Shown one piece after another: positions 16,931 to 51,587 of a stretch of 64,000 bases of DNA. The DNA is from Convolutriloba macropyga (taxonomy: Eukaryota). The notes below the pieces were generated by a model that was not told the origin of the DNA, did no database searches, and worked only from the letters and a program-made list of their open reading frames with translations. The DNA lies in contig NC_134472.1 in assembly GCF_964194025.1 (NCBI RefSeq), positions 64,914,001-64,978,000 of the forward strand, given 5' to 3'. The translations under genes were made by a program, and so were the position numbers. Positions within the stretch are counted from its first letter, which is position 1; each line of letters opens with the position of its first letter.

Positions 16931-16977
16931 CTGTAATAAGAGCAGCAACACAAAGTATTTTATTTCACCTGAACCTA

Positions 16978-22736: not shown

Positions 22737-22890
22737 TCAAGTAGGTCTCTCGTTAGAATGTTCTAGATGTAAGAAGAGTTCAGATCTCAAGCACGAAAAG
22801 CTAACAAAGTAGTCTTCACTTAAGAGATATAGCAACAAAAGAAGCGTCAAAAACAACATGGACAGCATCAAAAGTTTTCTAAACCAGTGA
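22737..22890 (-). other. C-terminal transmembrane helix plus 27-aa KASH-like luminal peptide
   Basis: The single strongly hydrophobic helix is preceded by RK and followed by SEDY...SC...LEHSNERPT. Compare vertebrate nesprin tails of the form SEEDYSC...LRYTNGPPP(T/L). PPPx is replaced by ERPT. Confidence 0.6.
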
Positions 22891-25800
22891 AATATTATGC
22901 TACATGTAGGCCTGGAAGCTAGAGAAGTTCTAGATTGTTCTGCAGTTCCAGATTTCGAGACACTGTGGGCGTTGTTTTGTTTCCCAATTCCTACGGCCGA
23001 AACTTGAAGCCTGCCATCGCCAAGATTATCATCACAGGTTCTCTCATCAGCCTGATTACAAAGAGGGTCCTCACTTCTCTGCCAATTTTCTCTATTTAAT
23101 AGGTCGCTGTCAGAATTTTGTGGCCTTCTGACAAAAGGTGGCGGAATCGAACTGGGAGCGTCACTTTCAGAAGTGTAACCCGATTCACCGTTTGAATTCT
23201 TAACCGGGGTTTGATTTCTTAGCAATATTGGACTCTGCACTCCGTTGTTGATCTCGTTTTCAATCATGTCACAAATGGGATCCCTTTCTGATGATTTTTT
23301 ACAACGCCTTTTCACTGATGATCCGGACCGACTGGTTCCACGCTTGCTTTGTTGACGTTCCAATTTTTTCAATGCTGTCACGACCGAATTCCGCTCAGAC
23401 GAATCCGAGGATGAAGCGAGCTCGGTTGACATTTGGCGGGTTTCGAGGAACTCGTTAGGGTCCAATCCAAACTCTGGCTCGAAATACATTTCACTTTTTC
23501 TGGTTGCTGATAACAATTGTGTTCCGCTCCTTGTTTCACATCGATTTTCTAAATTTAGCAAGTCTTCACTGTTGTTGATTTTTACACTTCGAACAAAAGC
23601 AGCTTTGTGTAGAGCGTTGTTTCTGGGTTTTACCGGAGCCGTCAAAATCAGACTTCGGCCTAAAGTTTCTGCGACTATTATTTTGTAGTCATCTTCTTTG
23701 TCTTTCGTTTCTTCGTCCTTTATTGTAGGCAGCGGGATTTCGTACGCAATTGGAGCTGAATACGACGAACTCTTGAACGGCGATGAGTGAAAACTGGGCA
23801 CGATAGACAAGTACTGTTCTGTTACAGCGGGTGTTTCGCAATCAAATTCATTTGCACCTTGCTCAAGGTCATCAATTTCAGTGGACGAAAAACTTAGCAT
23901 AGGATGATGTTGGTCAACTTCACTCGAGGGAAGTGAGAAGTTCAATTTGTAGTCTGATAGATTGAAGGAATCCTGGGAAGATGAGGTTGTGATGGACGGG
24001 AAGGATGTCTGTGTTAGTTTGTTGGTGGTTCCCAAATTGTCCGGAAGTTGAAGCGAATTTGGATCGTTCATATTGTCAAGAGATTTCGGAGACTCTTTCC
24101 TTTCAGATGGCAGCGGCTCCAGTAGATATCCGCTGTTTGTTGATTCCAAGTTATGCGTGTCGATTGACGATGATGGACAGTCTAGCGGACTTCTAGCAGT
24201 TGCAGCAGAATTTTGGTCGCCCAAGTTGGCATAAGAATTCAACTTTTCCGTGCTTTTTTCATGACTGTCAACTTTAATTTGCGGAGCATTTTGACGAACT
24301 GAAAACGAATCAGTTTCAAGATCGTTGTTAGGATGATCTCCAGAACTGTCCATGCCAATTTGTTCTGTCTTGAAAAACCCTCCTGTGGCAAGATGTTTGT
24401 CTGCATCAGTTGGATATGAGTCAATCAATTGGTCACAAGGTTGTTTTCCAGACTTATTGTCATCCAGTGGACTTACTGCATGTTCAGGATCGACAGGTTC
24501 CTCGAGTTCTGTCGGTTCCAAATCATCGTCGTCCGTCACGAATTCTTGATTTTCAGATGTACTTGTTTCTTCTAATTGTGATTGATCGTTATCTAGTGAT
24601 AGAGGTTCTGAAGGTATTTCACACTTGGCACTCATAAAAGCACTTTCTAATTCATCTCCGTCATCGTTTCTAGCTTCCGAAAGATCGCCAAAATGAGATT
24701 CCTCATCCTTATTCACTTCTTTGAGTGAAATGAAATTTGACTCTGAATAGCCATTTTGTGAAACTTCGTCTGATTTCGGAATGCTCTGACCTTCACTATC
24801 GAGAACTTTTGTACCCGATTCTGCACTTTGACTTCTACCAATTTCAGACCCATCTGTTACAGTTATCAACTTTTTGGTATCTGCGTTGCCGTCTTCCACT
24901 TCGCACGGTTCAAAATTGACATCTTGTACATTGTTTGCTTTATCTTTGAGCTCCAATTTGACGTCTGATCTTGACTCATACTCTCTCCGTGTAGCTAGAG
25001 TCGATTCGTCATCAACATGAGAACAGCGAGAAGTCAGTCGTTCCTTTCTCGTCTTCAGATCTCCAAGAATCAGCTCATCTTCAATTCTGTTCTCACTTGG
25101 TTGAGGGTTATGACGTTCTTTGTCTATTTCTAACCTCAGTTTCGAGATGATCTCAGCAGAATCAGATCTTCCTTCACAGTTTTCAGTTTCCATTTCAGGG
25201 TCACAGTCTGAAGTTGCTGTGCTGTCTCTTGGTGGCATTTCATAATCTTCGCCAGCTTTTCCATCTGAGGGATTTCCAGATTCAGCATCTTCCGAAGTCT
25301 TGCAATCATTGCGATAATCTAAGATCTGTTTCACATCCAATGGGCCCTCTAATAGATCTGAAGTTCCCTGCTCTTCTACAGAATCAGAAGGCAAATTTTC
25401 ATCCTCAGAGATGCAGACACTTTCTCCAGATGGCTCGAATGTTCCCGGATGATTAGTGCTATTGACCTCTGAAGAACAGCTATTCATCTCTGCCGTCCTA
25501 TCATTTTCCAAATTTGAGGTCAAGTTGTCTGTTTCCAGCTCGTGAGAATATTCGGCTTCTTCGGACCTGTTGACATTTGGATAACCAATTTCATCAGAAG
25601 AAGAGTTCTCATTAACTTCATCTGAACTTTGATGGACGTCAAGGAATTTATTCCTAGAATTCAAATTGACAGTTATCGCTGGATTCTTTTCGTCGCCAAC
25701 GTCTGAATTATCTCTGCCGTCGGATGAAACCTCTACATGCTTGACATCATTCGGTTCATCCCGTTTCTTCTCAGCAACTAAGTTAGAATTCAGGTCAGTT

Positions 25801-28800
25801 GGCAACTGACAAGCATCACGTTCAGAATCACTCCATTTTTCACTTATTTCCCCAATTTCTAATTGATGATTTTGCTCAGCATCCCTTCCACTAGCGTCTG
25901 ATAAAATCACCAAGTCAATCGCTTCGTGAGATATCATTATATCATCCGTTTTTGTTGATTGCGAACTATCAACCCTGAGCTCCGAACATGTTCCATTAGT
26001 CTCTAAATCATTGAAATCTATTTCGTTTGTATTAGTTGTGTTCACATCATCAAATCGCTCAAGATCGATGTCCAGAACACTACCCACATACGACAATTCC
26101 GCGCCATCTTTTTCAGAACGTCGTGTCATTTCAACATCCTCGTTAGATTCTGATACTTTGTTGCCTGCACCGCGGGATCCCTTTCTCATTCTCGCTTGTT
26201 TTTCGACCAAATCTGCTTGCTGAAAAAGAATTTCGTCTTCAATGCTTTGATTTTGTACGACCGTTATTCTTGAGTCATCGGTAAGATCGTCGTGAACTTT
26301 TGTCGTGTCACTTGAATTGTCCTCTTTATTCAACCCGAACGAACTCGGACTGTCATTGTCTACAAACTGGCCCTTTTCAGTATAGTCCATTGCTTCGTCA
26401 AGATCATCTCCCGTCGACTTTGTGGAAGATTTCCTACAACCAAATCTTGATAGTTCATGGTCTGAATCACTGTGGTGCAAGGCCGGATCATCTGTATTGA
26501 ATGACTGATCAGTAGGTACGTCAAACCTTTGAATTTCATTACCCGCATGGTCTGTGATTTCAGGGACTCCGTTGATATTAAAGTTTTCGACTGGTTTTAA
26601 GGAGTTTGGGTCAACAACGTTGCCTGCAGGGTCCTGATCTTGCAAACATTTTGTTGGTTGCTCATAGCTATTTTCAAAATCATCGGTGTTGTCTTTGGCT
26701 TCTTTGGTTTCAGCTTCCTCTCCAGTAAGTTGACCTGAGCAACTTCCAGCAAATAAAGGATTAGATTCTCCAACGCCTTCATTGACTAATTTTGAATCCA
26801 CATCAAGCTCGACCCTAGATAGAAATTCACTTCCGTTTTCATCATGATTTGATTCTTGTTCTTCAGTTTCACTCGGAGTTTCAGTGTTAGTTAAAAGATC
26901 GTCGATTTCATTCATATATGACAATTTATTCACTGTTTCTCGATTCCTTTTGACCAAATTTAGATCACTCGACGCCGATTCTTGAATTTCAGATTTCAAC
27001 ATCAATGGCTCGGTTGAAACGCCCGACTCGTTTTTCAGTTTGTCGAAATTCATCACGTTTGAATAATCTTGAGACCTGGGTACATTACTCTCACTTTCGT
27101 CGGCGAAATGACTCTCACTGTATTTCGTGTCGTGTGGCGGAATCAATTTCTCAGGCACTGCCAATCTTTCTTCGTTCTGATCTTTTTCAGTTTCAACAGT
27201 TGCGACATTTGATCCAGTTTGTCCTTTCAAGTTAGCATCCTCTTTATTGACATCTGTTACCGTTTCACCAGCAGAAGTTGTAGGTTCTATTTGTTCAGTC
27301 ATTTTCTTTGGTTTTGGTGAGCCCTTTTCAGTTTCGTCAACTGCAGCAAGATCTGGGTTCTGCATATTTGCCGAGTTAGCTTCAGATGTAAAAGCTTGGT
27401 CTTCAGATTCTTTTTCAGTTGATAATTCTTCTGTCAAATTTGGATCAATTTCTCTAGCATGAAAGTCCTGACTACCTTTAGTACGAGAATCTGCACGTGC
27501 ACCTTTGTGCTCTTCGCCTTTTAAGTCCAGAGATGAGATTTGAATGAAGGAGCTCAGGGGATCTGAACTTAGACTCGAACGACCATTGCTAATTGCACTT
27601 TTTGTCAAGTCACTTTCAGGTTCAAGTTGACAGACCAAAGACGGCTCTGAGCGGAATAGACGCTGGATAGTCGCATTCTTGTTTCCTGTTTTAAATGCAT
27701 CCGCGAATAAAGGAGGGGTACTAACAAACTTTTGCTCAAAAAGATGACTACTTATTTCAATTCCAATGTTATTATGGTGAACACGATCCGCATCGCCAGA
27801 GAACGAAGTCCGAAATGCATCTTGAACTGGGAATTGAATCTGGTCCAAGGGAGATCTAAACCCACCAGTGACATTTGGACCAATTATCGACATCGGCGGT
27901 GTTAGGCCAGTGGTTTCGGGTTGACTCGCTATCATTTGGAGTCCTTCACTTGTTTGAGGTTGAGATTGAGATACAGAAGTGTATGGCTTCTCACGTTCAG
28001 TGTTGCTGCAAAAGTTGTCAAAATTTACATCAGCTGTTAAATCATTCGGGTTGTCGTCGTTGGCGGCTAAATTAGTCAGACTGATGTTTGAGAAACGATT
28101 ATCGTTGTTGTGCAATTTGTTGTTTATTTCTCTGTGACTATCATCAATATCGTCAGTGACTTTGTTGGCAAGCTCTAACTTGGTGCAATTTGAGCTATCT
28201 GATGCAGTTTGTTGTAAGCTATCATCATTTGCAATGCAAACTGTTCCACTTTCCATATCCTCACCTGTGACGTCATTGGGATTTGTATTAAGCGAGAAGA
28301 AACCCGAATCATATTTGCTGTTAAGTGAGTTGAAATCAGGGTTAAAATGATTGTCGTTTGAAACTATACTTTCTGCCATGTTTGATTCATTGAACGAAAA
28401 ATTACAGTCATTTTCAGTTGAAAGATGCCATGAAGCCTTTGAAAGATTCGAATTTTGAGAAACTTGTTCAGAAATGCCAGGGACACAAAACAATTCAGGT
28501 TTTGATTGTTTCAATAATTTCTCCGAATAACTTGTAATTGATAAATTTTGATTTCCTAATGATTCTTTGCCAGCATTTGACTGCTCGTCCGTTGAATTAA
28601 GAGACGAGATTTTAGTTTCAGTCTTGTCTGATTTGCCTTCTATGTTTAACGCCTCATCATTAATGTCAGCTTTTTGATGAGAATTTTCAGTTGCTTCAAG
28701 ACTTGAGATTTTTGAAGATTCGCCACCGTTATTAACGTCAGTCAGGTTGTCAGTAACTGCGCTTTTGTGAAGCACTTTTTCCGAATAATCATCAACAGTT

Positions 28801-31800
28801 GAAATATTTTCGTTATCTATTTGAGAAACGTCTTCAGTGTCATTTCGGTTGGTTGCATGATCTTTTTCATAATCTGGCGAGATTTCAATTTGATGCTCTG
28901 TTACATTGATACCAGTAATCTTTGCGTCTTCGTCTATTGGTACTTTGTGCCATTCGGCAATGGTTGATGCACAAAATTTCTCTTTAATTTCTTCGTCAGA
29001 GTAACTTGTCATTTCGGGAATTAAGCTTGTAGTAACGCTAAATGGTACCGGAGCAAGGTTTTCAAAACTCAGCGTCGGTGAATTTTCTTCACTTTTAGAT
29101 TGTTGCCTCGCGTGTTTGAATTCATCTTCCATTTCCCGGTAATCCTCATCTAGTTTTAACTCAAGGTTGATGTCATCTTGATCGGCTGATTTTATTTCAT
29201 CCCCACCATCTACTTTCCTATCAATCTCAGTTTTCGCGCTCTCATTTGAAATCTTCGATAGGCTTTCAACATTTTCCCGATGTTCAGTGCCCAAAGCAGG
29301 CACTTCGCTTTTTCCAGAAACGTTTAGTTCCGACCCATTTGTTTTGCTTTTTTGAACTGGCGCAGTTAGTGTATTTTGATGACAATCTTTATGCGCGAAA
29401 CTATCGATATTCTTTACTCGATCGCTGCATGAATCATTTAACTTCTTTTCGGTTGGGTACAATTCTGAAAGGCAATCTTCACCCATTGTCAAATTTACAT
29501 TATCATTGTGTTCACTTGATTTGTTGTGAGTCTCTCCTATGACATTTTGACGATCAGGCGCTTTCTCTATATAATAATCGACTGCAATTTTGTTTGAAAT
29601 GTCTGTGGGCAATTGATCAGAAACAACAACCACACCAGCTTTTGCCGTTGAGGTCTTTTCATTTGAATCGTCAGCGGAAGAAACGGTACTGTCATTCAGG
29701 CCAATTGGAACACCAGTGAATTCTAGTTCAAGGTTGGACTGATCACTCTCATTTGCAGCAGAGACAGTCTTAGATGGTGAGAAATTAGATAGAGGTTCTT
29801 TTCTATGAGCAGACAAGCTTAAGTCAGCCGTGCATTCTGTGCTCTGATCAGGCAACGTATGCCATTCAGCGTTGACGAAATGTTCAAACTTTTCTGTGCT
29901 TTCTTCCTCTGAGAAACTTGTCAATTCAGGAATTGAAACCGCAGGCTTTCCAAAGAATTGGGGAATGGCCGAATCGGTCAGGGATTCGGGACTTTCGCTC
30001 AGAAACGGCATCCCGGAGTCGTGTATTATACCGCGAGCTTCGTGGTCCTGTTCAAACTCAAGTCCAAGTGTAACATCTGGAGCATCTGTATACTTCTCTT
30101 GATTCTCTGGCTTGTCATTTGATTCCCGTTTCAAGTTGATATCTGCACCCTCCTTGTAAGCGGTAAAGAGTTGCTCCTCTTTTGCGTTAGAATCAGAAAA
30201 ATTTCCTGCTTTAACAACTACATGTGTTTCAGAGCAATCGTTCAGGCTATTTGTTGCCGTTGACGACTCTTCATTTGAATTGTCGAAGGGAGAAACAGTA
30301 TAGTCCTTCTGGGCAATTGGAAAACTAGCTAATTCTGGTTGAACGTTAGGTATATCACTCTCAGAACTGTTTTCACGAGGAGATAAATCTAAGTTACACG
30401 TGTCATTTGAAGAAGCGTTGTCAGCCATATGCCAAGAAGCCTTCACAATTGATACAGATGCATCAATTAATTCTTCATCTCTGGAAGATGCAATTTCAGG
30501 GTCTTCACTTGAGAGCTTTTCATCAGACAGTGTAGTTTCAGTGCCATAATTTAAACACAACCTCAGGTCAAATTCACCAACCGGGCTCAACTGATGCTCC
30601 ATTTCAGACACGTGGTTCATATTCTGGATCTGAGCACCTCCCATTCCAGATGTGGGAAATAGCACTGATGTATCTTGCAAACTTGGGTCTGATGGCAAAC
30701 TACTTCTAGGTTCATTTGACCCTGCTGTTTCAGATAAGATTGCTTCTTCTTTAAGTGAGCTATCGTGCAATCTGTGCCATGCGGTGTCAACAATATTAAC
30801 CAACGTTTCATCATTTTCTGTCTCGGTGCCAATACTCAGAATTGGGTCCACATTTTGTTCGTTCGACGCCACTGTATCTTCGGGTTTGTAAGGCAAGTTT
30901 TCACTCATTGTCACGTTTGATTTCTCGGTTAGGCTAGGTTCTTGCGAAGATTTTTCTTGCATGCTCTGCCACGATTCGTCCTCAACTAATAGCTCAGTAT
31001 TTTCTGCCTTCTGTTCATTGACAATATCCGGTACCGGCATATAGTGAGATGTTAAATCTTTATTCATGTCAGAATCTTTATCGGAACATTCTCTCTGCTC
31101 ACTTTTCTGGACTGTAGAAGCCTCAATCAAACCAAGCTGATCAGAACGTGGCTCCTCAATTCTAGACTCAATGATACCTCTATGGTGTACAGTTGCTTCC
31201 AACTCGCTTACATCAGGCAATTGGGTATCAGACATGGTTTCCGATTTCTCGACCTTTTGATCGCTATTGCCACTTTCAGGCTGTTCGGTTTCTCCCGCAA
31301 CAACTTGAGTGTCATTACGTTGACCTTCACCGCCAGTCCCTGACTCTTTAACAAGCAGAGAAGTAGGTTCCTCTAGTGGCGATGATGACTCTTCCGCTGC
31401 TGACATTAGACTTGATAGTAAGATCGGACACGATGTATGGGCGATACTATTTTCAGGCAGATGGAACCATGCTGCATTGACGGACAAATTACTGTTTTCA
31501 TCAACACATTCATCGTTTACTTCAAAATCAGGAGCTCTAGTAACGGCTTCTTCTGCGGGAGTGATTGCAGGTTCAAGATTATCACAAACCACTGATGTCT
31601 TGTCAAGATTGGTTCTCTCGCGTGTTTCGTCGGAGTGCATTAAACCAGAGGCATCATCGTTAGGTTCCACCGCACTTGAAGCTCCAGTCGTCTCCGAAAC
31701 CTCTTCGTCCTCCACCGCAACATCTGAGTTTGAATCATCACGCTTCTCAATTTGTTCTTCGCTTTCAGAGACCTCTTCACGTGTACTGCTCTCGAGTTCG

Positions 31801-34800
31801 TTCAACCTCTGGTGTCGAGTTTCTTGGGTTTCGTTGAGCAATTGAATAGCTGGGCAATCATTCGTTACTTCGGGGAAAACCAAATTCTGCCCTCTATCTT
31901 GTACATTTTCAGCAGCCCAATTTTCCCATTCCTCCGATGCTACGTGAACTTTGCTTGCTGAGTTTGACGTTACTTGGCAGGACTCGAAAACATTTGGTTC
32001 TATGCAATCAAGCAACTGAAATGTATCGTTAGAAAAAGTCTCAGACCGTGATATGGATAGAATAGGTTCAGGGTCGCAGGATGTTATAATCGGGTGAGTA
32101 TTTGGCTGATCGATTTCCTTGACCAGGATATGCGAATTGGTTACTTGAATTCTATTAGCGCAACTGGACATTAGTGCTGTATCGTCAGTTTCTGATGCAA
32201 CTTTGCAGTCAATTGAAGTTTTGTCAAACGTCTTTTCGAAAGATGCAAAGTCCTTCTCTACAACTTTTCCGAAGGTTTGTAACCCCGCTTGTAGACTATT
32301 ACGAGAAGCAGAACATACTGGGGACAGTTGGGTGGGTGTTCGGACGTCTACGGGCGCAGATTCAATTGATGAGCTCAAATGAATTTTACTAGACTGTTCG
32401 TAAGAAGGGGTGTTGATTATAGTAGGATCATGACTGACAGCCAATTGCGGAGAAGCAGCACTGTTTGGCACTAATTGCAGAGCCTTTTCAAAAGTAATAG
32501 GGGGGTCAATAGTTTGAGGTTGATTAAAGCTATGAGATGATTGACTTAGGGGTGTGTTGGGATATGGGTTGATGGATGATGGCACTATATTGTACGGGAT
32601 GCTTGCCAAAATTTTAGGCGAAATATCTAACGAAATGATGCCTGGAGAATTGACATTTCCATCGCAAAAATGCTGGTCAGAAACTTCCAAAATAGGCAAA
32701 ATTGGTGTCGCACAGTCGGGCATGGTTTTGAGCAAGTTGTCAGAGTCGGTGGACTCAAAAGTTACGGCATCTAATAGTTTAGCTTGATCTATAGGTGGAA
32801 CATTAATGCACCTTTCCGCTTTTCTAACTATGAGCGAACCTTCAGTTCGAGGTCTAGATCCTGCAGACACAATTTCAGAAGTATTAACTCTGTTCAAATT
32901 CTTTACACAATTCGACATTGAGCCAGCTCCGATCTGAACTGGAAAGCCTTCGCTCAAAGAACATTCTGCTAACTCGATTGTCAATTTTTCATTTTCTTTG
33001 ACAGTCATATATTTAGGGTTGACATGGGTTGCTGAAATTTTTGCTACAGAAATCGTCGATCCATCATTCCCAACACTTAACATCGGGGGAACTTTCGCTG
33101 CTTCGACTTCTTTCACAATTATTTCACTTCTTGTTACTTCAAAAGGACCGCTCGACTTCATCAATTGGGAATTCGGATCGTTCAATTGGTTGCCTTCTTC
33201 AGAATTGCAAATAGCTTTACTCAAAATAGCATCATTACTGACCAATTTCAGGTGCTGATTCGAATTAATTTCACTCTTTCCCACAAATTTCAGTGAAACA
33301 TTAGGAGTAACTTCGGCCATTGCGGTTTTAAAATCCATCTTATTTGACTTCAACACTGGAGAGACTCCAGCTGTTTGGATTTGACTTTCGCCCTTCAATT
33401 TACTCGTGTCGTAAACGAGACAACTGTTCTCCATGCTGCCGACATTTTCTCCGTTCTCAACTATGCTATGCTGACCAAAGAGTTCTTGGTCACAAAATGG
33501 CGACGAGGCATCAAATTTGGGAAGATTTATGGAAGCACTGCTTTTAACAACTAGAGCACCTTCAATTGGTATTTTTGGATTGTCTATTGGTCTTACTTCG
33601 ATCACTGTTCCATTCTCTGGTGTTTCGTCCAGTTTTCTGTCATCACCAGCAACTTCTTTTGCGCTTTCATCCTGATCCGCACTGAAGCACTGACAATGGC
33701 TAGCTTCGGCACAGCAATCAACACACGTGACTGCAAATTTACATCCTTTGCTGAATTTTAGATCTGACGTAACCAAACTAGCCTTGCATACATTTACCAC
33801 GTTGGTCTCGCGTGAACATTTGTCTTGGTCAAATTCAGAGTTGATCGCAGTTTTTAGAACAGGAGCATCAATCTCTTTGACTAAAATGGAGCCGTCTTCA
33901 ATTTCGCTCTTACATATAGAATCGCTTGCACGGACAATTCCCAAACTAGTAAATGTCTCTTCAGGACCCAGCGTTGGATTTTCCTTACTTGGAAAGTCAC
34001 TTTCTTTCGTGTTTTCCGCAATTGAATTCCAAATGTTTTCTAATTTTTCTGAGGCCGATTCCTCAACTGGTTTTTGTTCCGATACTTGCCTCAATTCAGA
34101 ACCACAATTGAGTGACAATTCGGGACTCTTTCCTCGCTCGTCCACTGGAAAACCCCTTTGATCACCGTTTAGTGAGTCCAAGTGCCTTGAACTTAGGTCG
34201 TAACCATCAGCTGATTTATCAGTTGAAGAGAGAACATGCGTTATGACATCGGAATCACTCTTAAAGTCCGCGTCCTTCCAAAGCGAATCACGGCCGCTTG
34301 CTGACATGAAAATGGAGCTTGGATTGCTGCGCACTCTTCTCAGAGTAAACTCAAATCCATCTGTTTGAGAAATCGTTGAGTCTTGCATCTTGCCAACTCC
34401 GTTTTCTGCTGCTTCTTGCGCAGACGAACCATGAATGCGGTTGCAGCTCCTGCTTTGAACCCTTTTCAACTTCTCTTCGAGGGACACGAATTCAGACTTC
34501 ACCATGGGATTGCAACTGCCAGCAACATAATCACCGAATTTTGTTGAGTCAAAACATTTTCGTGGATCTTCCTGACTTTCGTTTGTGGAATTGTCTATAT
34601 TTGTTCGATCATTCATCAGTACAGTCATAATTTTGCCATCACTGATAATGTTCTTCTGGTGAAGAACGGCTTCCGTTTTTGACATCTCAGAACTTCCCAG
34701 TAACACGTCACAATTTGCATCAAACAATTTTATTTCCGAGTCTTTGGTACCTTTTTTATCCGCTAAGCTATGAGATAAAAAATTTTCTTCCAAATCCATA

Positions 34801-35717
34801 TTCTCGCTGTATGTGTTCTCATTGTCGTCTTGCAAAGAACCAAAACTCTGCATTTCAGCCAGTTCTAAATTCGATATATTAGTCAACAGCTTTGGTTTGA
34901 CCACTCTGTTACTAAGCGTATCAGACGGCTCAGAACTTAACTTTTCAGCTCTTACTGTTGACCATTGGTTCACATAGTTGTGGCCATTTGTATTAGTGAC
35001 GTCACTCAACAGATTATGATGCAAATGACCTTGAGCGGTGAAAATGTTTTCATGCACAGCAGCAGAATCACGATCGCAATTAAAAGAATCACGCGTGTAT
35101 TGAACTTCATTGTGATCAGCGCATGGCGGCACGTTTTCGGACACACTGGCATTTGCACTCCATACTGCGTTTTCGGTGATTGCAGCAGATTTATCGTTAT
35201 TTTCTTTTAAACTTTCAATTTGGAGATTAGAGTAATGCGGCAGAGTCGTACCCGAACCAATTTGATTTGCGTTTATAATTTCATTCGTCTGGTTACCTTC
35301 ACTTCGCGAGAAGTTCTCGGGTCTAAAAATTATCTCAGCTTCCTTACCCAGAACTTCTTGGATTGTCGCATCATTCTGACTTGTAACGATTTTTCCAAAT
35401 TTATTAGGTTCATTTACATCAACAGAGCTTAGAGATTCGTTGTGAGATTCAAAGTTTAGAGATTCGTTGTGAAAAACAATCGATGTCGCATCATTTAATG
35501 AATTGCGGTCATCGGAAGGGTCAAAAAGAGATGAAGAGTCCAATTGGTGAGAGGAGAGACCACCCGATGACGAAGTTGAAGGAGCAGTGGTTATGGTCAC
35601 CGATACGTCAGCCTCTGAATGGTCAGTATCTATTCCACTCTGATTGTCAGTAGCAATCACGTCATTGTCTTCTTTTAAAAGCTGCTTCACTTTATCAGTC
35701 CAGGCCGGTTGAACTTT
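22737..35717 (-). CDS. Giant terminal exon (12,981 nt, 4,326 aa plus stop) of a tail-anchored, KASH-like giant protein
   Basis: Uninterrupted ORF. Upstream: branch-point-like TGACTAAC (about 35760) and ccttttccttttttag, giving a phase-0 start KVQPAWTDK. Acidic S/E/D/N-rich composition. C-terminus WFRK-LLMLSMLFLTLLLLLYLL-SEDYFVSFSCLRSELFLHLEHSNERPT*. Confidence 0.93.
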   Translation of the reverse strand, partial: KVQPAWTDKVKQLLKEDNDVIATDNQSGIDTDHSEADVSVTITTAPSTSSSGGLSSHQLDSSSLFDPSDDRNSLNDATSIVFHNESLNFESHNESLSSVDVNEPNKFGKIVTSQNDATIQEVLGKEAEIIFRPENFSRSEGNQTNEIINANQIGSGTTLPHYSNLQIESLKENNDKSAAITENAVWSANASVSENVPPCADHNEVQYTRDSFNCDRDSAAVHENIFTAQGHLHHNLLSDVTNTNGHNYVNQWSTVRAEKLSSEPSDTLSNRVVKPKLLTNISNLELAEMQSFGSLQDDNENTYSENMDLEENFLSHSLADKKGTKDSEIKLFDANCDVLLGSSEMSKTEAVLHQKNIISDGKIMTVLMNDRTNIDNSTNESQEDPRKCFDSTKFGDYVAGSCNPMVKSEFVSLEEKLKRVQSRSCNRIHGSSAQEAAENGVGKMQDSTISQTDGFEFTLRRVRSNPSSIFMSASGRDSLWKDADFKSDSDVITHVLSSTDKSADGYDLSSRHLDSLNGDQRGFPVDERGKSPELSLNCGSELRQVSEQKPVEESASEKLENIWNSIAENTKESDFPSKENPTLGPEETFTSLGIVRASDSICKSEIEDGSILVKEIDAPVLKTAINSEFDQDKCSRETNVVNVCKASLVTSDLKFSKGCKFAVTCVDCCAEASHCQCFSADQDESAKEVAGDDRKLDETPENGTVIEVRPIDNPKIPIEGALVVKSSASINLPKFDASSPFCDQELFGQHSIVENGENVGSMENSCLVYDTSKLKGESQIQTAGVSPVLKSNKMDFKTAMAEVTPNVSLKFVGKSEINSNQHLKLVSNDAILSKAICNSEEGNQLNDPNSQLMKSSGPFEVTRSEIIVKEVEAAKVPPMLSVGNDGSTISVAKISATHVNPKYMTVKENEKLTIELAECSLSEGFPVQIGAGSMSNCVKNLNRVNTSEIVSAGSRPRTEGSLIVRKAERCINVPPIDQAKLLDAVTFESTDSDNLLKTMPDCATPILPILEVSDQHFCDGNVNSPGIISLDISPKILASIPYNIVPSSINPYPNTPLSQSSHSFNQPQTIDPPITFEKALQLVPNSAASPQLAVSHDPTIINTPSYEQSSKIHLSSSIESAPVDVRTPTQLSPVCSASRNSLQAGLQTFGKVVEKDFASFEKTFDKTSIDCKVASETDDTALMSSCANRIQVTNSHILVKEIDQPNTHPIITSCDPEPILSISRSETFSNDTFQLLDCIEPNVFESCQVTSNSASKVHVASEEWENWAAENVQDRGQNLVFPEVTNDCPAIQLLNETQETRHQRLNELESSTREEVSESEEQIEKRDDSNSDVAVEDEEVSETTGASSAVEPNDDASGLMHSDETRERTNLDKTSVVCDNLEPAITPAEEAVTRAPDFEVNDECVDENSNLSVNAAWFHLPENSIAHTSCPILLSSLMSAAEESSSPLEEPTSLLVKESGTGGEGQRNDTQVVAGETEQPESGNSDQKVEKSETMSDTQLPDVSELEATVHHRGIIESRIEEPRSDQLGLIEASTVQKSEQRECSDKDSDMNKDLTSHYMPVPDIVNEQKAENTELLVEDESWQSMQEKSSQEPSLTEKSNVTMSENLPYKPEDTVASNEQNVDPILSIGTETENDETLVNIVDTAWHRLHDSSLKEEAILSETAGSNEPRSSLPSDPSLQDTSVLFPTSGMGGAQIQNMNHVSEMEHQLSPVGEFDLRLCLNYGTETTLSDEKLSSEDPEIASSRDEELIDASVSIVKASWHMADNASSNDTCNLDLSPRENSSESDIPNVQPELASFPIAQKDYTVSPFDNSNEESSTATNSLNDCSETHVVVKAGNFSDSNAKEEQLFTAYKEGADINLKRESNDKPENQEKYTDAPDVTLGLEFEQDHEARGIIHDSGMPFLSESPESLTDSAIPQFFGKPAVSIPELTSFSEEESTEKFEHFVNAEWHTLPDQSTECTADLSLSAHRKEPLSNFSPSKTVSAANESDQSNLELEFTGVPIGLNDSTVSSADDSNEKTSTAKAGVVVVSDQLPTDISNKIAVDYYIEKAPDRQNVIGETHNKSSEHNDNVNLTMGEDCLSELYPTEKKLNDSCSDRVKNIDSFAHKDCHQNTLTAPVQKSKTNGSELNVSGKSEVPALGTEHRENVESLSKISNESAKTEIDRKVDGGDEIKSADQDDINLELKLDEDYREMEDEFKHARQQSKSEENSPTLSFENLAPVPFSVTTSLIPEMTSYSDEEIKEKFCASTIAEWHKVPIDEDAKITGINVTEHQIEISPDYEKDHATNRNDTEDVSQIDNENISTVDDYSEKVLHKSAVTDNLTDVNNGGESSKISSLEATENSHQKADINDEALNIEGKSDKTETKISSLNSTDEQSNAGKESLGNQNLSITSYSEKLLKQSKPELFCVPGISEQVSQNSNLSKASWHLSTENDCNFSFNESNMAESIVSNDNHFNPDFNSLNSKYDSGFFSLNTNPNDVTGEDMESGTVCIANDDSLQQTASDSSNCTKLELANKVTDDIDDSHREINNKLHNNDNRFSNISLTNLAANDDNPNDLTADVNFDNFCSNTEREKPYTSVSQSQPQTSEGLQMIASQPETTGLTPPMSIIGPNVTGGFRSPLDQIQFPVQDAFRTSFSGDADRVHHNNIGIEISSHLFEQKFVSTPPLFADAFKTGNKNATIQRLFRSEPSLVCQLEPESDLTKSAISNGRSSLSSDPLSSFIQISSLDLKGEEHKGARADSRTKGSQDFHAREIDPNLTEELSTEKESEDQAFTSEANSANMQNPDLAAVDETEKGSPKPKKMTEQIEPTTSAGETVTDVNKEDANLKGQTGSNVATVETEKDQNEERLAVPEKLIPPHDTKYSESHFADESESNVPRSQDYSNVMNFDKLKNESGVSTEPLMLKSEIQESASSDLNLVKRNRETVNKLSYMNEIDDLLTNTETPSETEEQESNHDENGSEFLSRVELDVDSKLVNEGVGESNPLFAGSCSGQLTGEEAETKEAKDNTDDFENSYEQPTKCLQDQDPAGNVVDPNSLKPVENFNINGVPEITDHAGNEIQRFDVPTDQSFNTDDPALHHSDSDHELSRFGCRKSSTKSTGDDLDEAMDYTEKGQFVDNDSPSSFGLNKEDNSSDTTKVHDDLTDDSRITVVQNQSIEDEILFQQADLVEKQARMRKGSRGAGNKVSESNEDVEMTRRSEKDGAELSYVGSVLDIDLERFDDVNTTNTNEIDFNDLETNGTCSELRVDSSQSTKTDDIMISHEAIDLVILSDASGRDAEQNHQLEIGEISEKWSDSERDACQLPTDLNSNLVAEKKRDEPNDVKHVEVSSDGRDNSDVGDEKNPAITVNLNSRNKFLDVHQSSDEVNENSSSDEIGYPNVNRSEEAEYSHELETDNLTSNLENDRTAEMNSCSSEVNSTNHPGTFEPSGESVCISEDENLPSDSVEEQGTSDLLEGPLDVKQILDYRNDCKTSEDAESGNPSDGKAGEDYEMPPRDSTATSDCDPEMETENCEGRSDSAEIISKLRLEIDKERHNPQPSENRIEDELILGDLKTRKERLTSRCSHVDDESTLATRREYESRSDVKLELKDKANNVQDVNFEPCEVEDGNADTKKLITVTDGSEIGRSQSAESGTKVLDSEGQSIPKSDEVSQNGYSESNFISLKEVNKDEESHFGDLSEARNDDGDELESAFMSAKCEIPSEPLSLDNDQSQLEETSTSENQEFVTDDDDLEPTELEEPVDPEHAVSPLDDNKSGKQPCDQLIDSYPTDADKHLATGGFFKTEQIGMDSSGDHPNNDLETDSFSVRQNAPQIKVDSHEKSTEKLNSYANLGDQNSAATARSPLDCPSSSIDTHNLESTNSGYLLEPLPSERKESPKSLDNMNDPNSLQLPDNLGTTNKLTQTSFPSITTSSSQDSFNLSDYKLNFSLPSSEVDQHHPMLSFSSTEIDDLEQGANEFDCETPAVTEQYLSIVPSFHSSPFKSSSYSAPIAYEIPLPTIKDEETKDKEDDYKIIVAETLGRSLILTAPVKPRNNALHKAAFVRSVKINNSEDLLNLENRCETRSGTQLLSATRKSEMYFEPEFGLDPNEFLETRQMSTELASSSDSSERNSVVTALKKLERQQSKRGTSRSGSSVKRRCKKSSERDPICDMIENEINNGVQSPILLRNQTPVKNSNGESGYTSESDAPSSIPPPFVRRPQNSDSDLLNRENWQRSEDPLCNQADERTCDDNLGDGRLQVSAVGIGKQNNAHSVSKSGTAEQSRTSLASRPTCSIIFHWFRKLLMLSMLFLTLLLLLYLLSEDYFVSFSCLRSELFLHLEHSNERPT

Positions 35718-42979: not shown

Positions 42980-43051
42980 CTGGTCCTCAGTTGACCTCAA
43001 CGCTTCCACACTTCGATGAAAATCAACTTGAGAGAAAAAATCATTTTGGGA
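42980..43051 (-). CDS. 72-nt symmetric (phase 0-0) exon of the giant KASH-like gene
   Basis: ttacttcag|TCC...CAG|gtaatc, encoding SQNDFFSQVDFHRSVEALRSTEDQ. Frame-compatible with both neighbouring exons. Confidence 0.6.
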
Positions 43052-43509: not shown

Positions 43510-43970
43510 TTTATCAAAATCTGATTTGTACACCGTCAAATTGTTCGTAGATTTTGGTCCTGATTTCGCAACAGACAAAGTCTTTTTCAGACGCTGTAGA
43601 ATTGACGTATGTGATATTTTCGTGGTCTTTGATTCTTTCTTGATTTGTGACTTCGCTCTGCTCCCTCGAACAGAAGAACTAATGACATTCTCAGCAGATG
43701 AAGAAAACACACGGTTCTTGTCTCGCGTTTGAGCAACAAAATCATGCCTCGACTCGGGCAAAAATCTGTGACTGCCTTTTCGTGACGTCATTATCACCAA
43801 CAGCTCACTGTCGGAATAACAAGTATCTTCATATTTTAGCTCACTGTGATCTTTGTGTAATTCTCTGCACTCGTCATTTTTCAACTGCAAATTGAAGTTG
43901 CCGACGGTGTTTTGAGACGAGTTGAAACACCTCTGAGAATCAAGTTCAATGCCACCACTTAGCGCAGCTT
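43510..43970 (-). CDS. Internal exon (461 nt) of the giant KASH-like gene
   Basis: Acceptor ccgtttag|AA is phase 1, matching the upstream donor G|gttagt. Open reading EAALSGGIELDSQRC...YKSDFDK. Donor AAA|gtgagt is phase 0. Confidence 0.8.
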
Positions 43971-44263
43971 CTAAACGGTGCGATCAATTCAAACTCTATC
44001 AAGACTCAAAACGTGAAAAAAACCCGTTTACACTACTCAAACGAGCTAATTTAAACAAGATAGGACTGGAATTATAAACAAAACCGTCGCGATCGTTTAG
44101 AGTCACTCAAATCATAGTAGCTCATACAAGAGTTAAGAGAAAAAATACAACAGCTACTGCATACAGCCTAAGATTGAATGTGCCGTAAAAGCTGAAAGAA
44201 AAATGTTATCATCTAGATCCCAAAAAAACTTTTGTCGTTCGGTCGTTCGTTGCCAAAACTAAC

Positions 44264-47030
44264 CTCTCATGGGCGTGTCTGAAACGGTTGACTTGCATCT
44301 CAACTCCTGACTTGATATTGTCAAACAGGGATATTGTTCCTGCCTCATTTGAAGCGCAAAATCCAGTTGAAGCAAGGGTCTAGATTCGTTAGTCAGGAAC
44401 AGAATGCCACACGAACCAATGTGATTACAAGTTGAATGTAAATCTGTATATGTTTTTGAGGATATGTAGTCAATATTATTAACGAAGTCTAGTTTAGCAG
44501 CATTTTCAGCATTAAGGTTTTGAAAATCTTGATGTCCTGTTTCGAACCTGTCGACTTTAGAAGCTACAGAAGGTTGGCAAGATATTGAAAGATCAGAACA
44601 ATTATTTGAATTCGCTTTTTCTGATCCATTTTTCGTAAAATCTAAATGCGGTGGGACTGAGTATGTACTGCTGCTCGTCACAACAGGTAACTCCACTCTT
44701 GTTTCACATTCACCTGCTGTTTGAGATAGAGCGTTGTGCATTGGAATGTCGCCCTGTGTAAACATATTGGGACAGCTAGCCAACTTTTTCAAATTTTCCG
44801 ATGCTAATTCTTCGATTTCATCCAATGAACAGACAGATAAAGATTTGTTATTCCTTCTCTTGGTTACTTTTGGGTAATAAAAATTGATTTCAGAAAATTT
44901 AGCAGCATTTTCACTTTGCACCATTGGGTCAGATCTCGTGGGTTTCTCAGAACCCGATGAATTTTCGAGTTGAGTTGAGATTGGTTCCACGAAAAGCGAC
45001 ACTTCAGAGGGCTCGATGACGTCATTTGAGTCAGCAATAGCACCATTTTTAAAGCCAATGAGAGTAGCATTAGACGTTTTCTTTAATCCTTTTGAAAGTC
45101 GCTTAACCCGCTCTGGAACCCAATTAACTTCACCAACTTCATTCACTTTTGCAATTAAAAGATCTTCCTCGAACCAGTCATCAGTTTCACGTGCAGCAAT
45201 GCCAGCTTCTGTATCATTTGGATCTTCTATCCCCAGATCGAAGTCACTAGCCAAACCTTTCTTCCTGGCTCTTTTTGTGTCAATCCAAGGCTCTTTGGAA
45301 GGTTTGCGCACTAACTCTTTGACCAAAACTTCATTGCCTTTGGAATCGAGACGAATTACGATTATTTCCTCTTCAATTAATTCAACTTCTTTTGTTATTT
45401 TCCGTCTTTTCTTTTTCGTTCGTCGCTTTAGAGAGTCATAATTGCCTTCGGAAGCCGAGGTGAGGTAACTATCCGACATTTGAGACAAATTTGAAGCCGA
45501 GGAAACATCAGTTGCAAGAGAAATGGTTGATTTTGGGATTTCGAGTGCCAAGCACTTTGAGAAACCACTTTGCGCAGGTAGAGTAGGTTTTTTATCAACT
45601 TTACACACATCGACTTCTGGTTTTGCATTCATAAGGAGAAGAATGATTTCCTCTTGGACAGTTCCAAAACACTTTCGCTGCAGCTCTCGCTCTATAGCAG
45701 TTGTTGATCTGGCTCTCCGCACTGGACTGTCCAGAACTGACTGGATATCTTCGTCAATGTATTTGAATTCACCTTCATTGTCGCATTGATTCAAGGTCGA
45801 TTCTGAATCAGCATGGTTCGAAAATCTTACTTTACAGCTACTGCGTGGGAAAGTGTCAAATCTTTTCGATGGAATTTCATCTAATTTGAAATTGTCGACA
45901 AATTTGAATCTTTCTTCTTCGGTTAAAGTTTTCGTGTTCGCTTCAAATGATGTGTCTGCAAGCGATGCTTCGGCTAAGGTGAGCGTCGAGCAGCTTTGAT
46001 CAATTTCAAGTGAATGATTGCTTTGATCGTGTGGGTTTTCTACAATTTCGATAGTCGAGGTATTTTCTGGTAGCTTTTCGAGTAGTCCAGTTTCAGCATC
46101 ATCTTCGACTTCTTTTATCACGGCGTCACGTTTCGAGTCTTTGAGAGGTTTCGGGGGTTCCTTAACAACCGTTTCTCGGACAATCTCCTCTTTTCCATCC
46201 ACTCCAATTCTGATGTAAATAATTTCCTCTTCGATCATTTCTCGTTCTAATTTGGAAACTTTTTTGCTCTTTTTCTTCTTTTTCTTTTTCTTATCGCTTC
46301 CACTGTTGCTCTTTGTCACACTTGAATCATTGTATTCCTCGTTGCTTTTGTCGTTTGTGTGTTTAGCTAATGGAGTGCTCATATCATGGTCAATATTTAC
46401 AGCAGACGTTTGTTCTTGAGAAACGTCCAAACTCATGGTTGAAACTGTCGATACACTATCTTCGAAATGAGCAATGGTCTGCATGCTTATACTGTCAATT
46501 GGAACACTTGATGAAATGACTATTTTGTGGTCAATTCCCTTTACAATAGAAGCCGATGAGGAATCGAACAGCCCACTACTGTCCAAAGATATTTCTGACG
46601 AAACCTCGTGATGGTATATAACTTTCCCTACAGGACTAAAAAGCTTAGATTTGCTGTCACTCACTGAAGAAGTTACATTTCCAGAAGCAGCTGTATTTAT
46701 AGCAAATGTTTCTGGTAAAATAGTGTTCCTTCTCTGGTTCACAGAGTAAAAGTTTCGAGGTAGGCTCTTGTGAATGTAAGTAGTTCGTCCAGGTTTGCTA
46801 TGAGATTTAACTTTGCTGTCCGCAGCTGTATTTGTTCTAGGCTTGATGAATTTCTTGCGACGAGGAGTCAGATCTGAGAATTCGTCAAGAAAAGCGAGTG
46901 GTGCTTCGTTATCATCTGAGTCTGAGAGCAATTCCGGCTCCGCCAAAAAAGTCTTACGTTTTTGTGTCCAACTGGAATTGGCAATTGACAAACTGTCCAA
47001 TAGACGTTGTGGTCGCCTTTTGGACAATTT
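44264..47030 (-). CDS. Large internal exon (2,767 nt) of the giant KASH-like gene
   Basis: Acceptor tttttttag|AAA (phase 0), a 922-codon open frame, donor AGAG|gttagt (phase 1). Same S/E/D-rich composition as the giant exon, with two Lys-rich repeat modules. Confidence 0.88.
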
Positions 47031-51163: not shown

Positions 51164-51181
51164 CAGTGATCAATTCAGCTC
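51164..51181 (-). other. Candidate 18-nt microexon
   Basis: cttttag|GAGCTGAATTGATCACTG|gtaagt, open only in phase 1-1 (AELIT). Confidence 0.35.
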
Positions 51182-51425
51182 CTAAAAGTATAACAATTAT
51201 TGCACAACCTCATTACGAATATTTGATTTGCGTTTTGTACAGAATTCTCGTTTATCTCACATCAAATAACCCATATCAATATCATTAACCCCACAATCAT
51301 TATTCATCGCAGTTAAGTCAATAGGCTCAGATTCTTCAATTACATCTACATTTCAAAAAAAATAATGAGGATCAGAGAATATTTTCTGCTTTGCTGACAT
51401 ATGGTATAGTATATTGAATACTCAC

Positions 51426-51587
51426 GTCATGGCTACTCTCTTCTAGTCCGAAGTGAATATCGGGTGACTCTTTTCTATCACAAGATGTTCGTCTACTGGC
51501 ATCTTTCTTTGCTTTATTGCTGTGTTCAGTTGATGTTGGCTGTTGTTTCTGCAAAAAAGCGAGCACCTTTGATGCCAGTTTAGGCAT
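51426..51587 (-). CDS. Candidate first coding exon of the giant KASH-like gene
   Basis: ATG at 51587 with an in-frame TAG just upstream. Reads MPKLASKVLAFLQKQ...EESSHD, then donor GAC|gtgagt in phase 0, matching the 47030 acceptor. Confidence 0.55.

What the first reader, a model, noticed from the sequence alone, without database searches (positions are those of the whole stretch)
22737..51587. Giant (~5,480 aa) disordered protein ending in a divergent KASH-like tail: candidate non-spectrin nesprin
Seen: five exons with GT-AG sites and matching phases (162+2767+461+72+12981 = 16,443 nt, 5,481 codons including the stop). The one clear transmembrane helix is near the C-terminus, has basic residues (WFRK) on its N-side, and is followed by a 27-aa tail SEDYFVSFSCLRSELFLHLEHSNERPT*. 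Known: KASH proteins of the LINC complex are tail-anchored in the outer nuclear membrane by a TM helix plus a luminal peptide of about 30 aa or less that binds SUN domains. Vertebrate nesprin tails read SEEDYSC...[10 protein letters not shown], and plant WIP-type tails end in VPT. Inference: SEDY after the helix, one Cys, and LEHSN-ERPT against [10 protein letters not shown] suggest a KASH peptide that has lost PPPx and moved its Cys from about -23 to -17. Known giant KASH proteins (nesprin-1/2, ANC-1, Msp300) use CH domains and helical repeats, and I see neither here. This could be a new architecture: a huge acidic disordered tether or brush on the nuclear surface.
Basis: partly seen in the sequence, partly recalled or inferred. 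Interest (0 to 1): 0.88.

Follow-up and report, generated by a model that had tools for sequence, protein, structure and literature searches.

The report
Giant acoel tail-anchored protein, KASH-like tail
A real gene of the acoel worm Convolutriloba macropyga encodes a roughly 5,460-residue acidic, apparently unfolded protein held in a membrane by its last 45 residues; its conserved 27-residue tail resembles, but does not match, the peptide that normally hooks proteins to the nuclear envelope.

Summary
The gene is real. The 72-nt fifth exon is unsupported.

The protein has one strong hydrophobic helix 27 residues from the C-terminus. Its net charge is about -441. It has no Pfam domain and no predicted fold.

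A second lineage of unidentified origin (6,577-6,865 aa) shares only the last ~465 residues, at ~35% identity.

Homology to KASH is not shown:
- Pfam KASH does not hit, although the control peptides score 55-60 bits.
- hhalign gives 1.3% probability.
- The tail ends ERPT/EKPT, not PPPX.

Order-based tests give only modest support (shuffle p 0.001-0.09; best or second-best window in each protein).

My best reading is an acoel-specific outer-nuclear-membrane/ER tail-anchored protein with a degenerate, single-proline KASH-like peptide (about 0.5). The main rival is an ER anchor with a non-SUN luminal partner.

Calling the non-spectrin design a "new architecture" is overstated, because non-spectrin KASH proteins are already known. 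The most conserved block is cytoplasmic and begins with an LC8-type KxTQT motif.

The parts
51426..51587 (-). Exon 1 (162 nt) with the start codon at 51587-51585. An in-frame TAG lies 9 nt upstream.
   Evidence: identical to the start of XP_075245789.1.
44264..47030 (-). Exon 2 (2,767 nt, 922 codons). It is polyampholyte and lysine-rich, with no domain and no detectable homologue.
   Evidence: AF2 single-sequence pLDDT is about 32.
43510..43970 (-). Exon 3 (461 nt).
   Evidence: acceptor TTTAG, donor GTGAGT.
42980..43051 (-). One of three possible 72-nt 'exon 4' candidates. It is unsupported and not part of the RefSeq model.
22737..35717 (-). Giant last exon (12,981 nt; 4,326 codons plus the stop). 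It is non-repetitive, acidic and Ser/Asn/Thr-rich.
28356..31583 (-). Six degenerate ~65-residue repeats centred on PE.TS.S.EE ... A.WH..P (model aa 2533-3608). They are specific to this lineage.
22740..24134 (-). Conserved C-terminal region (last ~465 aa). It is the main part alignable with the second lineage (~35% identity). Between haplotypes it shows stronger purifying selection than the rest.
23931..24023 (-). Cytoplasmic block NK[L/I]TQTSFPSITTSSSQDSFNLSDYKLNFSL, conserved at 30 of 31 positions (only L/I varies). It begins with an LC8/DYNLL-type KxTQT motif.
   Evidence: motif definition from the PMC3078936 abstract.
23358..23414 (-). Conserved block SS.DSS.RNS.VTALK.LE.
23166..23201 (-). 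Invariant block KNSNGESGYTSE. It is also present in a marine metatranscriptome fragment (P0010).
22821..22886 (-). WFRK basic flank plus an 18-residue Leu-rich transmembrane helix.
   Evidence: It is the only AF2 segment with pLDDT above 80.
22740..22820 (-). 27-residue luminal tail SEDYFVSFSCLRSELFLHLEHSNERPT (KASH-like, net acidic). The stop codon is at 22737-22739.

Best explanation
This is a lineage-restricted gene found so far in one named acoel and one unidentified lineage. It encodes a ~5,456-residue, strongly acidic, intrinsically disordered cytoplasmic chain that is tail-anchored by one very hydrophobic C-terminal helix. The helix is expected to insert into the ER/outer nuclear membrane and leave 27 residues in the lumen. 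That luminal peptide is held constant in length and largely in sequence, and it most likely acts as a degenerate KASH peptide. In this reading its free C-terminal ...PT docks in the pocket of a SUN-domain trimer, and the alternating hydrophobic stretch LFLHL pairs with the KASH lid, concentrating the protein on the outer nuclear membrane. The cytoplasmic chain would then work as a long flexible scaffold carrying short linear motifs. These include six W-H repeats, a conserved KxTQT candidate LC8 (dynein light chain) site that would dimerise the chain, and two Ser-rich blocks, rather than actin-binding CH domains and a spectrin rod. Shown: the gene model, the topology features, the composition, the absence of domains, and the conservation pattern. 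Inferred: ER/ONM insertion, SUN binding, LC8 binding and the scaffold role.
For: The gene model equals RefSeq XP_075245789.1. There is a single TM 27 aa from the end, with a basic cytosolic flank and a net-acidic tail. AF2 is confident only for that helix. The tail is 19/27 identical and 25/27 similar, with no indel, between lineages whose remaining sequence is ~35% identical or unalignable. Between haplotypes, the last 500 aa have 5 nonsynonymous and 10 synonymous differences, against pN/pS 0.61 overall. The tail meets the operational KASH rules of PMC4050730: it directly follows a TMD, it is 9-40 aa long, it ends XXPT, and it is present in the family members. It shares ordered elements with PDB nesprin peptides: SEDY/EEDY at the membrane edge, SC, RS, L..(S/T)N and a terminal PT. 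Shuffle p is 0.001-0.09. The tail is the best of 6,553 27-mers in P0003 (z 5.6) and the second-best locus of 5,454 in C. macropyga (z 4.4). P0003/P0004 carry a Cys at exactly -23, the position of the SUN-linking Cys in nesprin-1/2. Failure of profile detection is not decisive: the crystallised KASH6 peptide reaches only E=2.4 against a KASH1-3 profile.
Against: There is no statistically significant similarity to KASH. Pfam PF10541 is silent at E<=10 in both lineages, while the control peptides score 55-60 bits. hhalign gives 1.3% probability. PDB searches with the tail find nothing. The terminus ERPT/EKPT fails both the animal pattern [PATHQL]PP[QTVFILM] and the plant pattern [DTVAMPLIFY][VAPIL]PT (PMC4050730). 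The prolines that orient the carboxylate (PMC3585024) are reduced to one, and a charged residue sits at -2. The conserved Cys is at -17, not -23. Conservation rests on only two independent lineages. No SUN protein of this animal was examined.
Confidence: 0.5

Rival explanations
1. It is a giant tail-anchored ER (or other endomembrane) protein that does not bind SUN. The conserved luminal tail serves another partner, or insertion and retention, and its resemblance to KASH is coincidental. The protein would organise or space cytoplasm and organelles from the ER surface. A precedent is ANC-1, which positions organelles independently of its KASH and actin-binding domains (title of PMC8139857).
For: All profile tests for KASH are negative, with a working positive control. 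PPPX is absent. Similarity statistics are only at the 0.001-0.09 level. In C. macropyga another window of the protein scores higher than the tail. The most conserved block is cytoplasmic, not luminal.
Against: From my own knowledge, conserved 27-residue luminal tails of fixed length are unusual for tail-anchored proteins outside the KASH group. The tail starts with SEDY at the membrane edge and ends in PT, as KASH peptides do. The tail is the top-scoring window in P0003.
Confidence: 0.37
2. It is an ordinary nesprin whose CH-domain and spectrin-repeat exons lie upstream and were missed.
For: Giant KASH genes often have many isoforms and distant 5' exons (my own knowledge). No transcript data were available here.
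Against: The RefSeq model starts at the same ATG. An in-frame stop lies 9 nt upstream of it. The 12 kb upstream in the window holds only a reverse-transcriptase fragment and ORFs without Pfam hits. The 5,456 residues themselves contain no spectrin or CH signal. AF2 predicts almost no helices in the first 1,130 aa. Ser+Asn+Thr+Pro+Gly make up about 36% of residues.
Confidence: 0.05
3. It is not a functional protein: a decaying or transposon-derived ORF, or an annotation artefact.
For: pN/pS is 0.61 between haplotypes. The central exon diverges more (95.6% identity) than the introns (97.9-98.9%). No homologues exist outside two or three lineages.
Against: A 12,981-nt open frame in ~41% GC DNA cannot arise by chance. 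Every haplotype indel is in frame, including those of 60 and 23 codons. The second lineage keeps single ORFs of 6,577-6,865 codons. The C-terminal region is under clear purifying selection. A related fragment occurs in a marine metatranscriptome.
Confidence: 0.03

Closest known systems
Canonical animal KASH domain (nesprin-1/2/3 peptides in PDB 4DXR, 4DXS, 6WME; Pfam PF10541)
   Same: Both are tail-anchored with a luminal peptide of about 27-30 aa. Both have an acidic SE(E)DY at the membrane edge, an SC dipeptide, an RS pair about 15 residues from the end, a hydrophobic stretch followed by (S/T)N, and a terminal PT. In both, the TM and tail are the conserved parts of an otherwise fast-evolving protein.
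   Different: This tail has one proline instead of PPPX, and Glu-Arg/Lys where two prolines should be. It is three residues shorter. Its invariant Cys is at -17 rather than -23. It has no Pfam hit.
Klarsicht (Drosophila) and UNC-83 (C. elegans): non-spectrin KASH proteins
   Same: Both have large cytoplasmic parts without CH or spectrin domains that act through motors and adaptors (PMC3777164, PMC2733748). Klarsicht is a large protein with no recognisable domains apart from its C-terminus; this last point rests on my own knowledge and was not verified here.
   Different: They carry canonical KASH domains and are two to five times shorter. No sequence similarity to them was detected.
Msp300 isoform PE (Drosophila nesprin)
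   Same: It has long negatively charged, disorder-like regions in a nuclear-surface scaffold (PMC11230431).
   Different: The Msp300 repeats are well-conserved ~100-aa tandem units within a spectrin-repeat gene. Here the chain is essentially non-repetitive, apart from six degenerate motifs.
Plant KASH proteins (WIP, SINE) found by the DORY rules
   Same: They are defined by a TMD, a short tail and a terminal ...PT with a single obligatory proline, and they have lineage-specific cytoplasmic parts (PMC4050730).
   Different: The plant pattern needs a hydrophobic or small residue at -2 ([VAPIL]), whereas here it is Arg/Lys. Plant tails are described as shorter and unable to form disulfide bonds (PMC13200780 abstract).
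JAW1/LRMP (KASH6)
   Same: It is an atypical KASH whose sequence departs from nesprin-1-3, and it is found in both the ER and the outer nuclear membrane (PMC10827754). It is nearly invisible to a KASH1-3 profile. Its N-terminal region is described as intrinsically disordered (PMC7804115 title).
   Different: It is a small protein. Its C-terminus still inserts into the SUN pocket in the canonical way.
LC8/DYNLL-binding linear motifs
   Same: NK[L/I]TQTS matches K(-3), T(-1), Q(0) and T(+1) of [D/S]K x [T/V/I] Q [T/V] [D/E] (PMC3078936). It lies in a disordered region, as LC8 sites do.
   Different: Positions -4 (Asn) and +2 (Ser) are off-consensus. There is a single site. Conservation runs on for 24 more residues, so LC8 alone does not explain the block.

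Membership tests
KASH-domain proteins (functional class) | Tail-anchored topology: one TM helix at the extreme C-terminus, with the bulk of the protein cytoplasmic | tested here: met
   There is a single hydrophobic peak (KD 2.56) at aa 5436-5454 of 5480, with a basic WFRK flank and no N-terminal signal-like segment. AF2 predicts a helix with pLDDT above 80 only there.
KASH-domain proteins (functional class) | Luminal peptide of about 20-30 aa (9-40 in the DORY rules) directly after the TM and ending the protein | tested here: met
   The tail is 27 aa in both lineages, with no indel. Criteria are from PMC3777164 and PMC4050730.
KASH-domain proteins (functional class) | TM and luminal peptide conserved among family members while the cytoplasmic part diverges | tested here: met
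   The tail is 70% identical and 93% similar, against ~35% in the last 465 aa and no alignment elsewhere. Only two independent lineages were available.
KASH-domain proteins (functional class) | SUN binding and SUN-dependent localisation to the outer nuclear membrane | not testable with these tools
   No multimer modelling was possible, and no acoel SUN sequence could be retrieved. This needs experiment.
Canonical metazoan KASH (Pfam PF10541) | C-terminal PPPX (two or three prolines plus one residue); DORY animal pattern [PATHQL]PP[QTVFILM] | tested here: not met
   The tails end ERPT (C. macropyga) and EKPT (P0003/P0004). Definitions are from PMC3777164 and PMC4050730.
Canonical metazoan KASH (Pfam PF10541) | Match to the family HMM at or above the gathering score (23 bits) | tested here: not met
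   There is no hit at E<=10 for the last 45, 60 or 100 aa of either lineage. Control nesprin peptides score 55-60 bits.
Canonical metazoan KASH (Pfam PF10541) | Cysteine near -23 able to form a disulfide with SUN | tested here: inconclusive
   An invariant Cys sits at -17. A Cys at -23 is present in P0003/P0004, but C. macropyga has Tyr there. The disulfide is not required for binding (PMC3585024).
Plant-type KASH (WIP/SINE) | Terminal pattern [DTVAMPLIFY][VAPIL]PT | tested here: not met
   E at -3 and R/K at -2 fall outside the pattern. Only the looser XXPT seed pattern is met (PMC4050730).
Nesprins (nuclear envelope spectrin-repeat proteins) | Spectrin repeats, and in the giant isoforms paired N-terminal CH domains | tested here: not met
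   No CH or spectrin Pfam hit at E<=10 in any exon. No internal repeats by BLAST. Almost no helices in AF2 models of aa 1-1130 and the last 501 aa. 79 of 108 windows are disordered on the charge-hydropathy plot.
LC8/DYNLL partners | Eight-residue motif with a TQT anchor in a disordered segment | tested here: inconclusive
   NK[L/I]TQTS is conserved in both lineages and is the only TQT in the C. macropyga protein. It fits four of six specified positions of the PMC3078936 motif. Binding was not tested.

The most novel reading that the evidence does not exclude
The tail is a genuine SUN-binding KASH peptide that works with a single proline (E-R/K-P-T). That would make it the first animal KASH without PPPX and an intermediate between the animal PPPX and plant xVPT types. 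It would anchor a ~600 kDa polyanionic disordered chain on the nuclear surface of acoels, and that chain would recruit LC8/dynein through its invariant KxTQT block.
Probability: 0.35. Interest if true: 0.65.

Novelty: new variant of a known kind. Interest (0 to 1): 0.5.

Why it matters
KASH proteins are hard to find by sequence, and most known ones came from genetics. None was turned up for Xenacoelomorpha in the one literature search run here. A conserved single-proline tail that still bound SUN would relax the accepted PPPX rule for animals. It would also give a natural test of how much of the KASH peptide the SUN pocket really needs. In addition, it would add a nuclear-surface protein built almost wholly of acidic disorder and short motifs. 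If the tail does not bind SUN, the gene is still an unusually large, fast-evolving, lineage-restricted ER-anchored protein, and interest would then be local to acoel biology.

Tried and rejected
- **Pfam scans.** All exons and the last 45-100 aa of both lineages were scanned at E<=10. There was no KASH, CH or spectrin hit, only sub-threshold noise (Topoisom_I_N and Ferlin_C).
- **PDB searches with the tail.** Both phmmer and hmmsearch found nothing.
- **Three-sequence KASH HMM against the whole giant proteins.** Nothing was found. The test is uninformative because the model is so short.
- **hhalign of the tail against a KASH alignment.** Probability was 1.3%.
- **Exhaustive profile search of 1.84 billion representatives with the last 501 aa.** It returned only the two lineages plus one 150-aa metatranscriptome fragment. 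No bridge to nesprins appeared.
- **Word-index search with exon 2.** No homologue was found.
- **P0010.** It has no contig on record.
- **Klarsicht paper PMC1448802.** It is not held, so the Klarsicht description rests on reviews and my own knowledge.
- **Alternatives considered and rejected.**
  - GPI-anchor signal: the hydrophobic stretch is not terminal, and there is no signal peptide.
  - PTS1 or KDEL-type signals: absent.
  - Mitochondrial or peroxisomal tail anchor: from my own knowledge, the TM is too hydrophobic and the tail is acidic.
  - Inner-nuclear-membrane residence: a ~600 kDa cytoplasmic part is too large. This is inference.
  - Tandem-repeat protein: no TRF or BLAST self-hits in the exons.
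- One homologue search was left unused, because the exhaustive search had already covered its purpose.
Full report
**Observation**

The finding lies on the minus strand. A single open frame runs from 35717 to the stop at 22737-22739 (12,981 nt) and is preceded by a polypyrimidine tract and AG.

An exact-sequence look-up shows that the last-exon ORF clusters with NCBI XP_075245789.1, [quoted passage not shown], 5,456 aa. Joining exons 1, 2, 3 and the last exon reproduces that protein exactly. The window therefore comes from an acoel flatworm, whose chromosomal genome has been published (PMC13650328).

The 72-nt "exon 4" is absent from the RefSeq model. Three different open 72-nt AG...GT segments exist in that intron, so it is no better than chance. 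An in-frame TAG lies 9 nt upstream of the ATG. The 12 kb further upstream holds only a reverse-transcriptase fragment and ORFs without Pfam hits.

**The protein**

- Composition: Ser 13.4%, Glu 9.8%, Asp 8.0%, Asn 7.1%, with net charge -441.
- 79 of 108 100-residue windows fall on the disordered side of the charge-hydropathy plot.
- Pfam finds nothing above noise in any exon at E<=10.
- There are no tandem DNA repeats in the exons and no BLAST self-hits.
- AlphaFold2 gives pLDDT 32 and almost no secondary structure for residues 1-1130 (single sequence, so a weak test).
- For the last 501 residues it gives pLDDT 35, and only the transmembrane helix is confident.
- The one hydrophobic segment (LLMLSMLFLTLLLLLYLL, Kyte-Doolittle 2.56 against 1.2 for the next best) has WFRK on its N-side. 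It is followed by SEDYFVSFSCLRSELFLHLEHSNERPT and the stop.

From established knowledge of tail-anchored proteins, a very hydrophobic helix followed by a short net-acidic tail predicts insertion into the ER and the continuous outer nuclear membrane. It does not predict mitochondrial or peroxisomal targeting. This step is inference.

**Relatives**

A word-index search and an exhaustive HMMER profile search of 1.84 billion representatives found four things:
- the protein itself;
- a second haplotype (P0002, from an ENA metagenome assembly; the last 500 aa are 99% identical);
- a second lineage (P0003, P0004, P0008, P0009), consisting of single ORFs of 6,577-6,865 codons that are about 94% identical to each other, from an unidentified source;
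- a 150-aa marine metatranscriptome fragment (P0010).

The second lineage aligns with the C. macropyga protein essentially only over the last ~465 residues, at ~35% identity, plus two short islands. Exon 2 has no detectable homologue.

Between the two C. macropyga haplotypes the giant exon shows pN/pS of about 0.61. It has only in-frame indels, including ones of 60 and 23 codons. The last 500 residues have 5 nonsynonymous and 10 synonymous differences. So most of the chain is weakly constrained but is kept open, and the C-terminal region is under clear purifying selection.

**The tail**

The alignment of the two lineages reads:
- FRKLLMLSMLFLTLLLLLYLL-SEDYFVSFSCLRSELFLHLEHSNERPT
- FRKLWKLLLILFLILLLIYLF-SEDCFVSFSCIKSDTFFHLDHSNEKPT

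In the tail, 19 of 27 residues are identical and 25 of 27 are similar. Both tails are exactly the same length, in proteins that are otherwise full of indels. The caveat is that only two independent lineages are available.

**Is it a KASH domain?**

I retrieved real KASH peptides from the PDB:
- nesprin-2: [29 protein letters not shown]
- nesprin-1: the same with ALS and H substitutions
- 6WME chain B: [28 protein letters not shown]

The acoel tail shares their order of elements: acidic SEDY at the membrane edge, SC, RS about 15 residues from the end, a hydrophobic stretch, (S/T)N, and a terminal PT.

| Test | Result |
|---|---|
| Semi-global alignment against 5,000 shuffles of the tail | p = 0.001-0.09, depending on the pair |
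| Sliding-window test, P0003 | tail is the best of 6,553 27-mers (z 5.6) |
| Sliding-window test, C. macropyga | tail is the second-best locus of 5,454 (z 4.4) |
| Pfam PF10541 on either lineage, E<=10 | no hit |
| Pfam PF10541 on the control peptides | 55-60 bits |
| hhalign, tail against KASH alignment | 1.3% probability |
| PDB searches with the tail | nothing |

[quoted passage not shown] The prolines are said to orient the terminal carboxylate into the SUN pocket (PMC3585024). The DORY patterns for animals ([PATHQL]PP[QTVFILM]) and plants ([DTVAMPLIFY][VAPIL]PT) are both failed. Only the seed pattern XXPT, the position after a TMD, the 9-40 aa length and presence across the family are met (PMC4050730).

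The invariant Cys is at -17. P0003/P0004 also carry a Cys at exactly -23, where C. macropyga has Tyr.

One calibration matters here. The crystallised, SUN1-binding KASH6 peptide of JAW1/LRMP reaches only E = 2.4 against a KASH1-3 profile. Structural work also stresses that only the C-terminal insertion is common, while upstream sequences differ (PMC10827754). A negative profile result therefore lowers the claim "member of Pfam KASH" much more than the claim "works like a KASH".

**Verdict on mechanism**

I put about 0.5 on a degenerate, single-proline KASH-like peptide that retains this giant chain on the outer nuclear membrane through SUN. I put about 0.37 on an ER-anchored protein whose luminal tail has another role. 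About 0.05 goes to a mis-modelled ordinary nesprin, about 0.03 to a non-functional ORF, and the remainder is unassigned.

**Comparison with what is known**

The word "nesprin" does not apply, because the protein has no spectrin repeats. The claim of a new architecture is too strong:
- Klarsicht, UNC-83, ZYG-12, nesprin-4, KASH5, JAW1/LRMP and the plant families lack spectrin rods (PMC2733748, PMC10827754, PMC4050730).
- A Drosophila Msp300 isoform carries negatively charged, disorder-like repeats (PMC11230431).

What would be new is the combination of extreme size, almost complete disorder, and a PPPX-less tail in an animal.

**Additional anatomy**

The most conserved element of the family is cytoplasmic: NK[L/I]TQTSFPSITTSSSQDSFNLSDYKLNFSL (window 23931-24023). 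It is identical in both lineages at every position except the L/I. It opens with a KxTQT that fits the LC8/DYNLL motif [D/S]K x [T/V/I] Q [T/V] [D/E] (PMC3078936), and it is the only TQT in the C. macropyga protein.

Two more blocks are conserved: SS.DSS.RNS.VTALK.LE, and the fully invariant KNSNGESGYTSE. The latter is also seen in the metatranscriptome fragment.

C. macropyga has six degenerate ~65-residue repeats around A.WH..P. The other lineage has its own ~180-residue tandem repeat with SENFDWADKDG, in 3 or 5 copies. These features fit a scaffold of short linear motifs, but no binding was tested.

**Limits**

I examined no SUN protein of this animal, no multimer model, no transcript data, and no DNA for the second lineage. 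The similarity statistics are modest, and the two tails are not independent samples.

Noticed in passing
window 23931-24023 (minus): A 31-residue cytoplasmic block, NK[L/I]TQTSFPSITTSSSQDSFNLSDYKLNFSL, is identical at all positions but one between lineages that otherwise share about 35% identity. It is more conserved than the KASH-like tail. It starts with an LC8/DYNLL-type KxTQT motif, but the remaining 24 invariant residues are unexplained.
   Followed up: partly
window 26393-35363 versus 35951-45625, compared with L001: Between the two haplotypes the central giant exon is more diverged (95.6% identity, pS 0.052, pN/pS 0.61, in-frame indels up to 60 codons) than the neighbouring introns (97.9-98.9%). 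The cause could be fast or diversifying evolution, or uneven haplotype age; I could not tell which.
   Followed up: partly
window 28356-31583 (minus): Six degenerate ~65-residue repeats centred on PE.TS.S.EE...A.WH..P account for 6 of the protein's 21 tryptophans. They were not detected in the second lineage.
   Followed up: partly
P0003 aa 5244-5607 and P0004 aa 5161-5893: The second lineage has a ~180-residue tandem repeat containing SENFDWADKDG, with 3 copies in P0003 and 5 in P0004. This is copy-number variation between near-identical sequences.
   Followed up: no
P0010 (MERC/Tara metatranscriptome ERR1711879): A 150-aa transcript fragment carries ...KNSNVESGYTSESDVPGSIPP..., matching the invariant block upstream of the TM. 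A third, expressed relative therefore exists in marine samples. Its C-terminus is unknown.
   Followed up: partly
window 16736-16951 (minus): An ORF matches the start of the CAP / cysteine-rich secretory protein domain (PF00188, E 3e-6). It is probably an exon of the downstream neighbouring gene.
   Followed up: no
window 73-1482 (plus) and 55960-56391 (plus): A 469-aa ORF has Cys/His-rich, transposase-like features but no Pfam hit. A separate reverse-transcriptase fragment matches RVT_1 (E 4e-11). Both look like transposon debris flanking the gene.
   Followed up: no
window 59467-59666 and 62069-62091: Two runs of N (200 and 23 bases).
   Followed up: no
PDB search: The solved KASH6 (IRAG2/LRMP) peptide scores only E = 2.4 against a nesprin-1-3 KASH profile. 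This is a useful calibration of how poorly sequence profiles recover bona fide divergent KASH peptides.
   Followed up: yes
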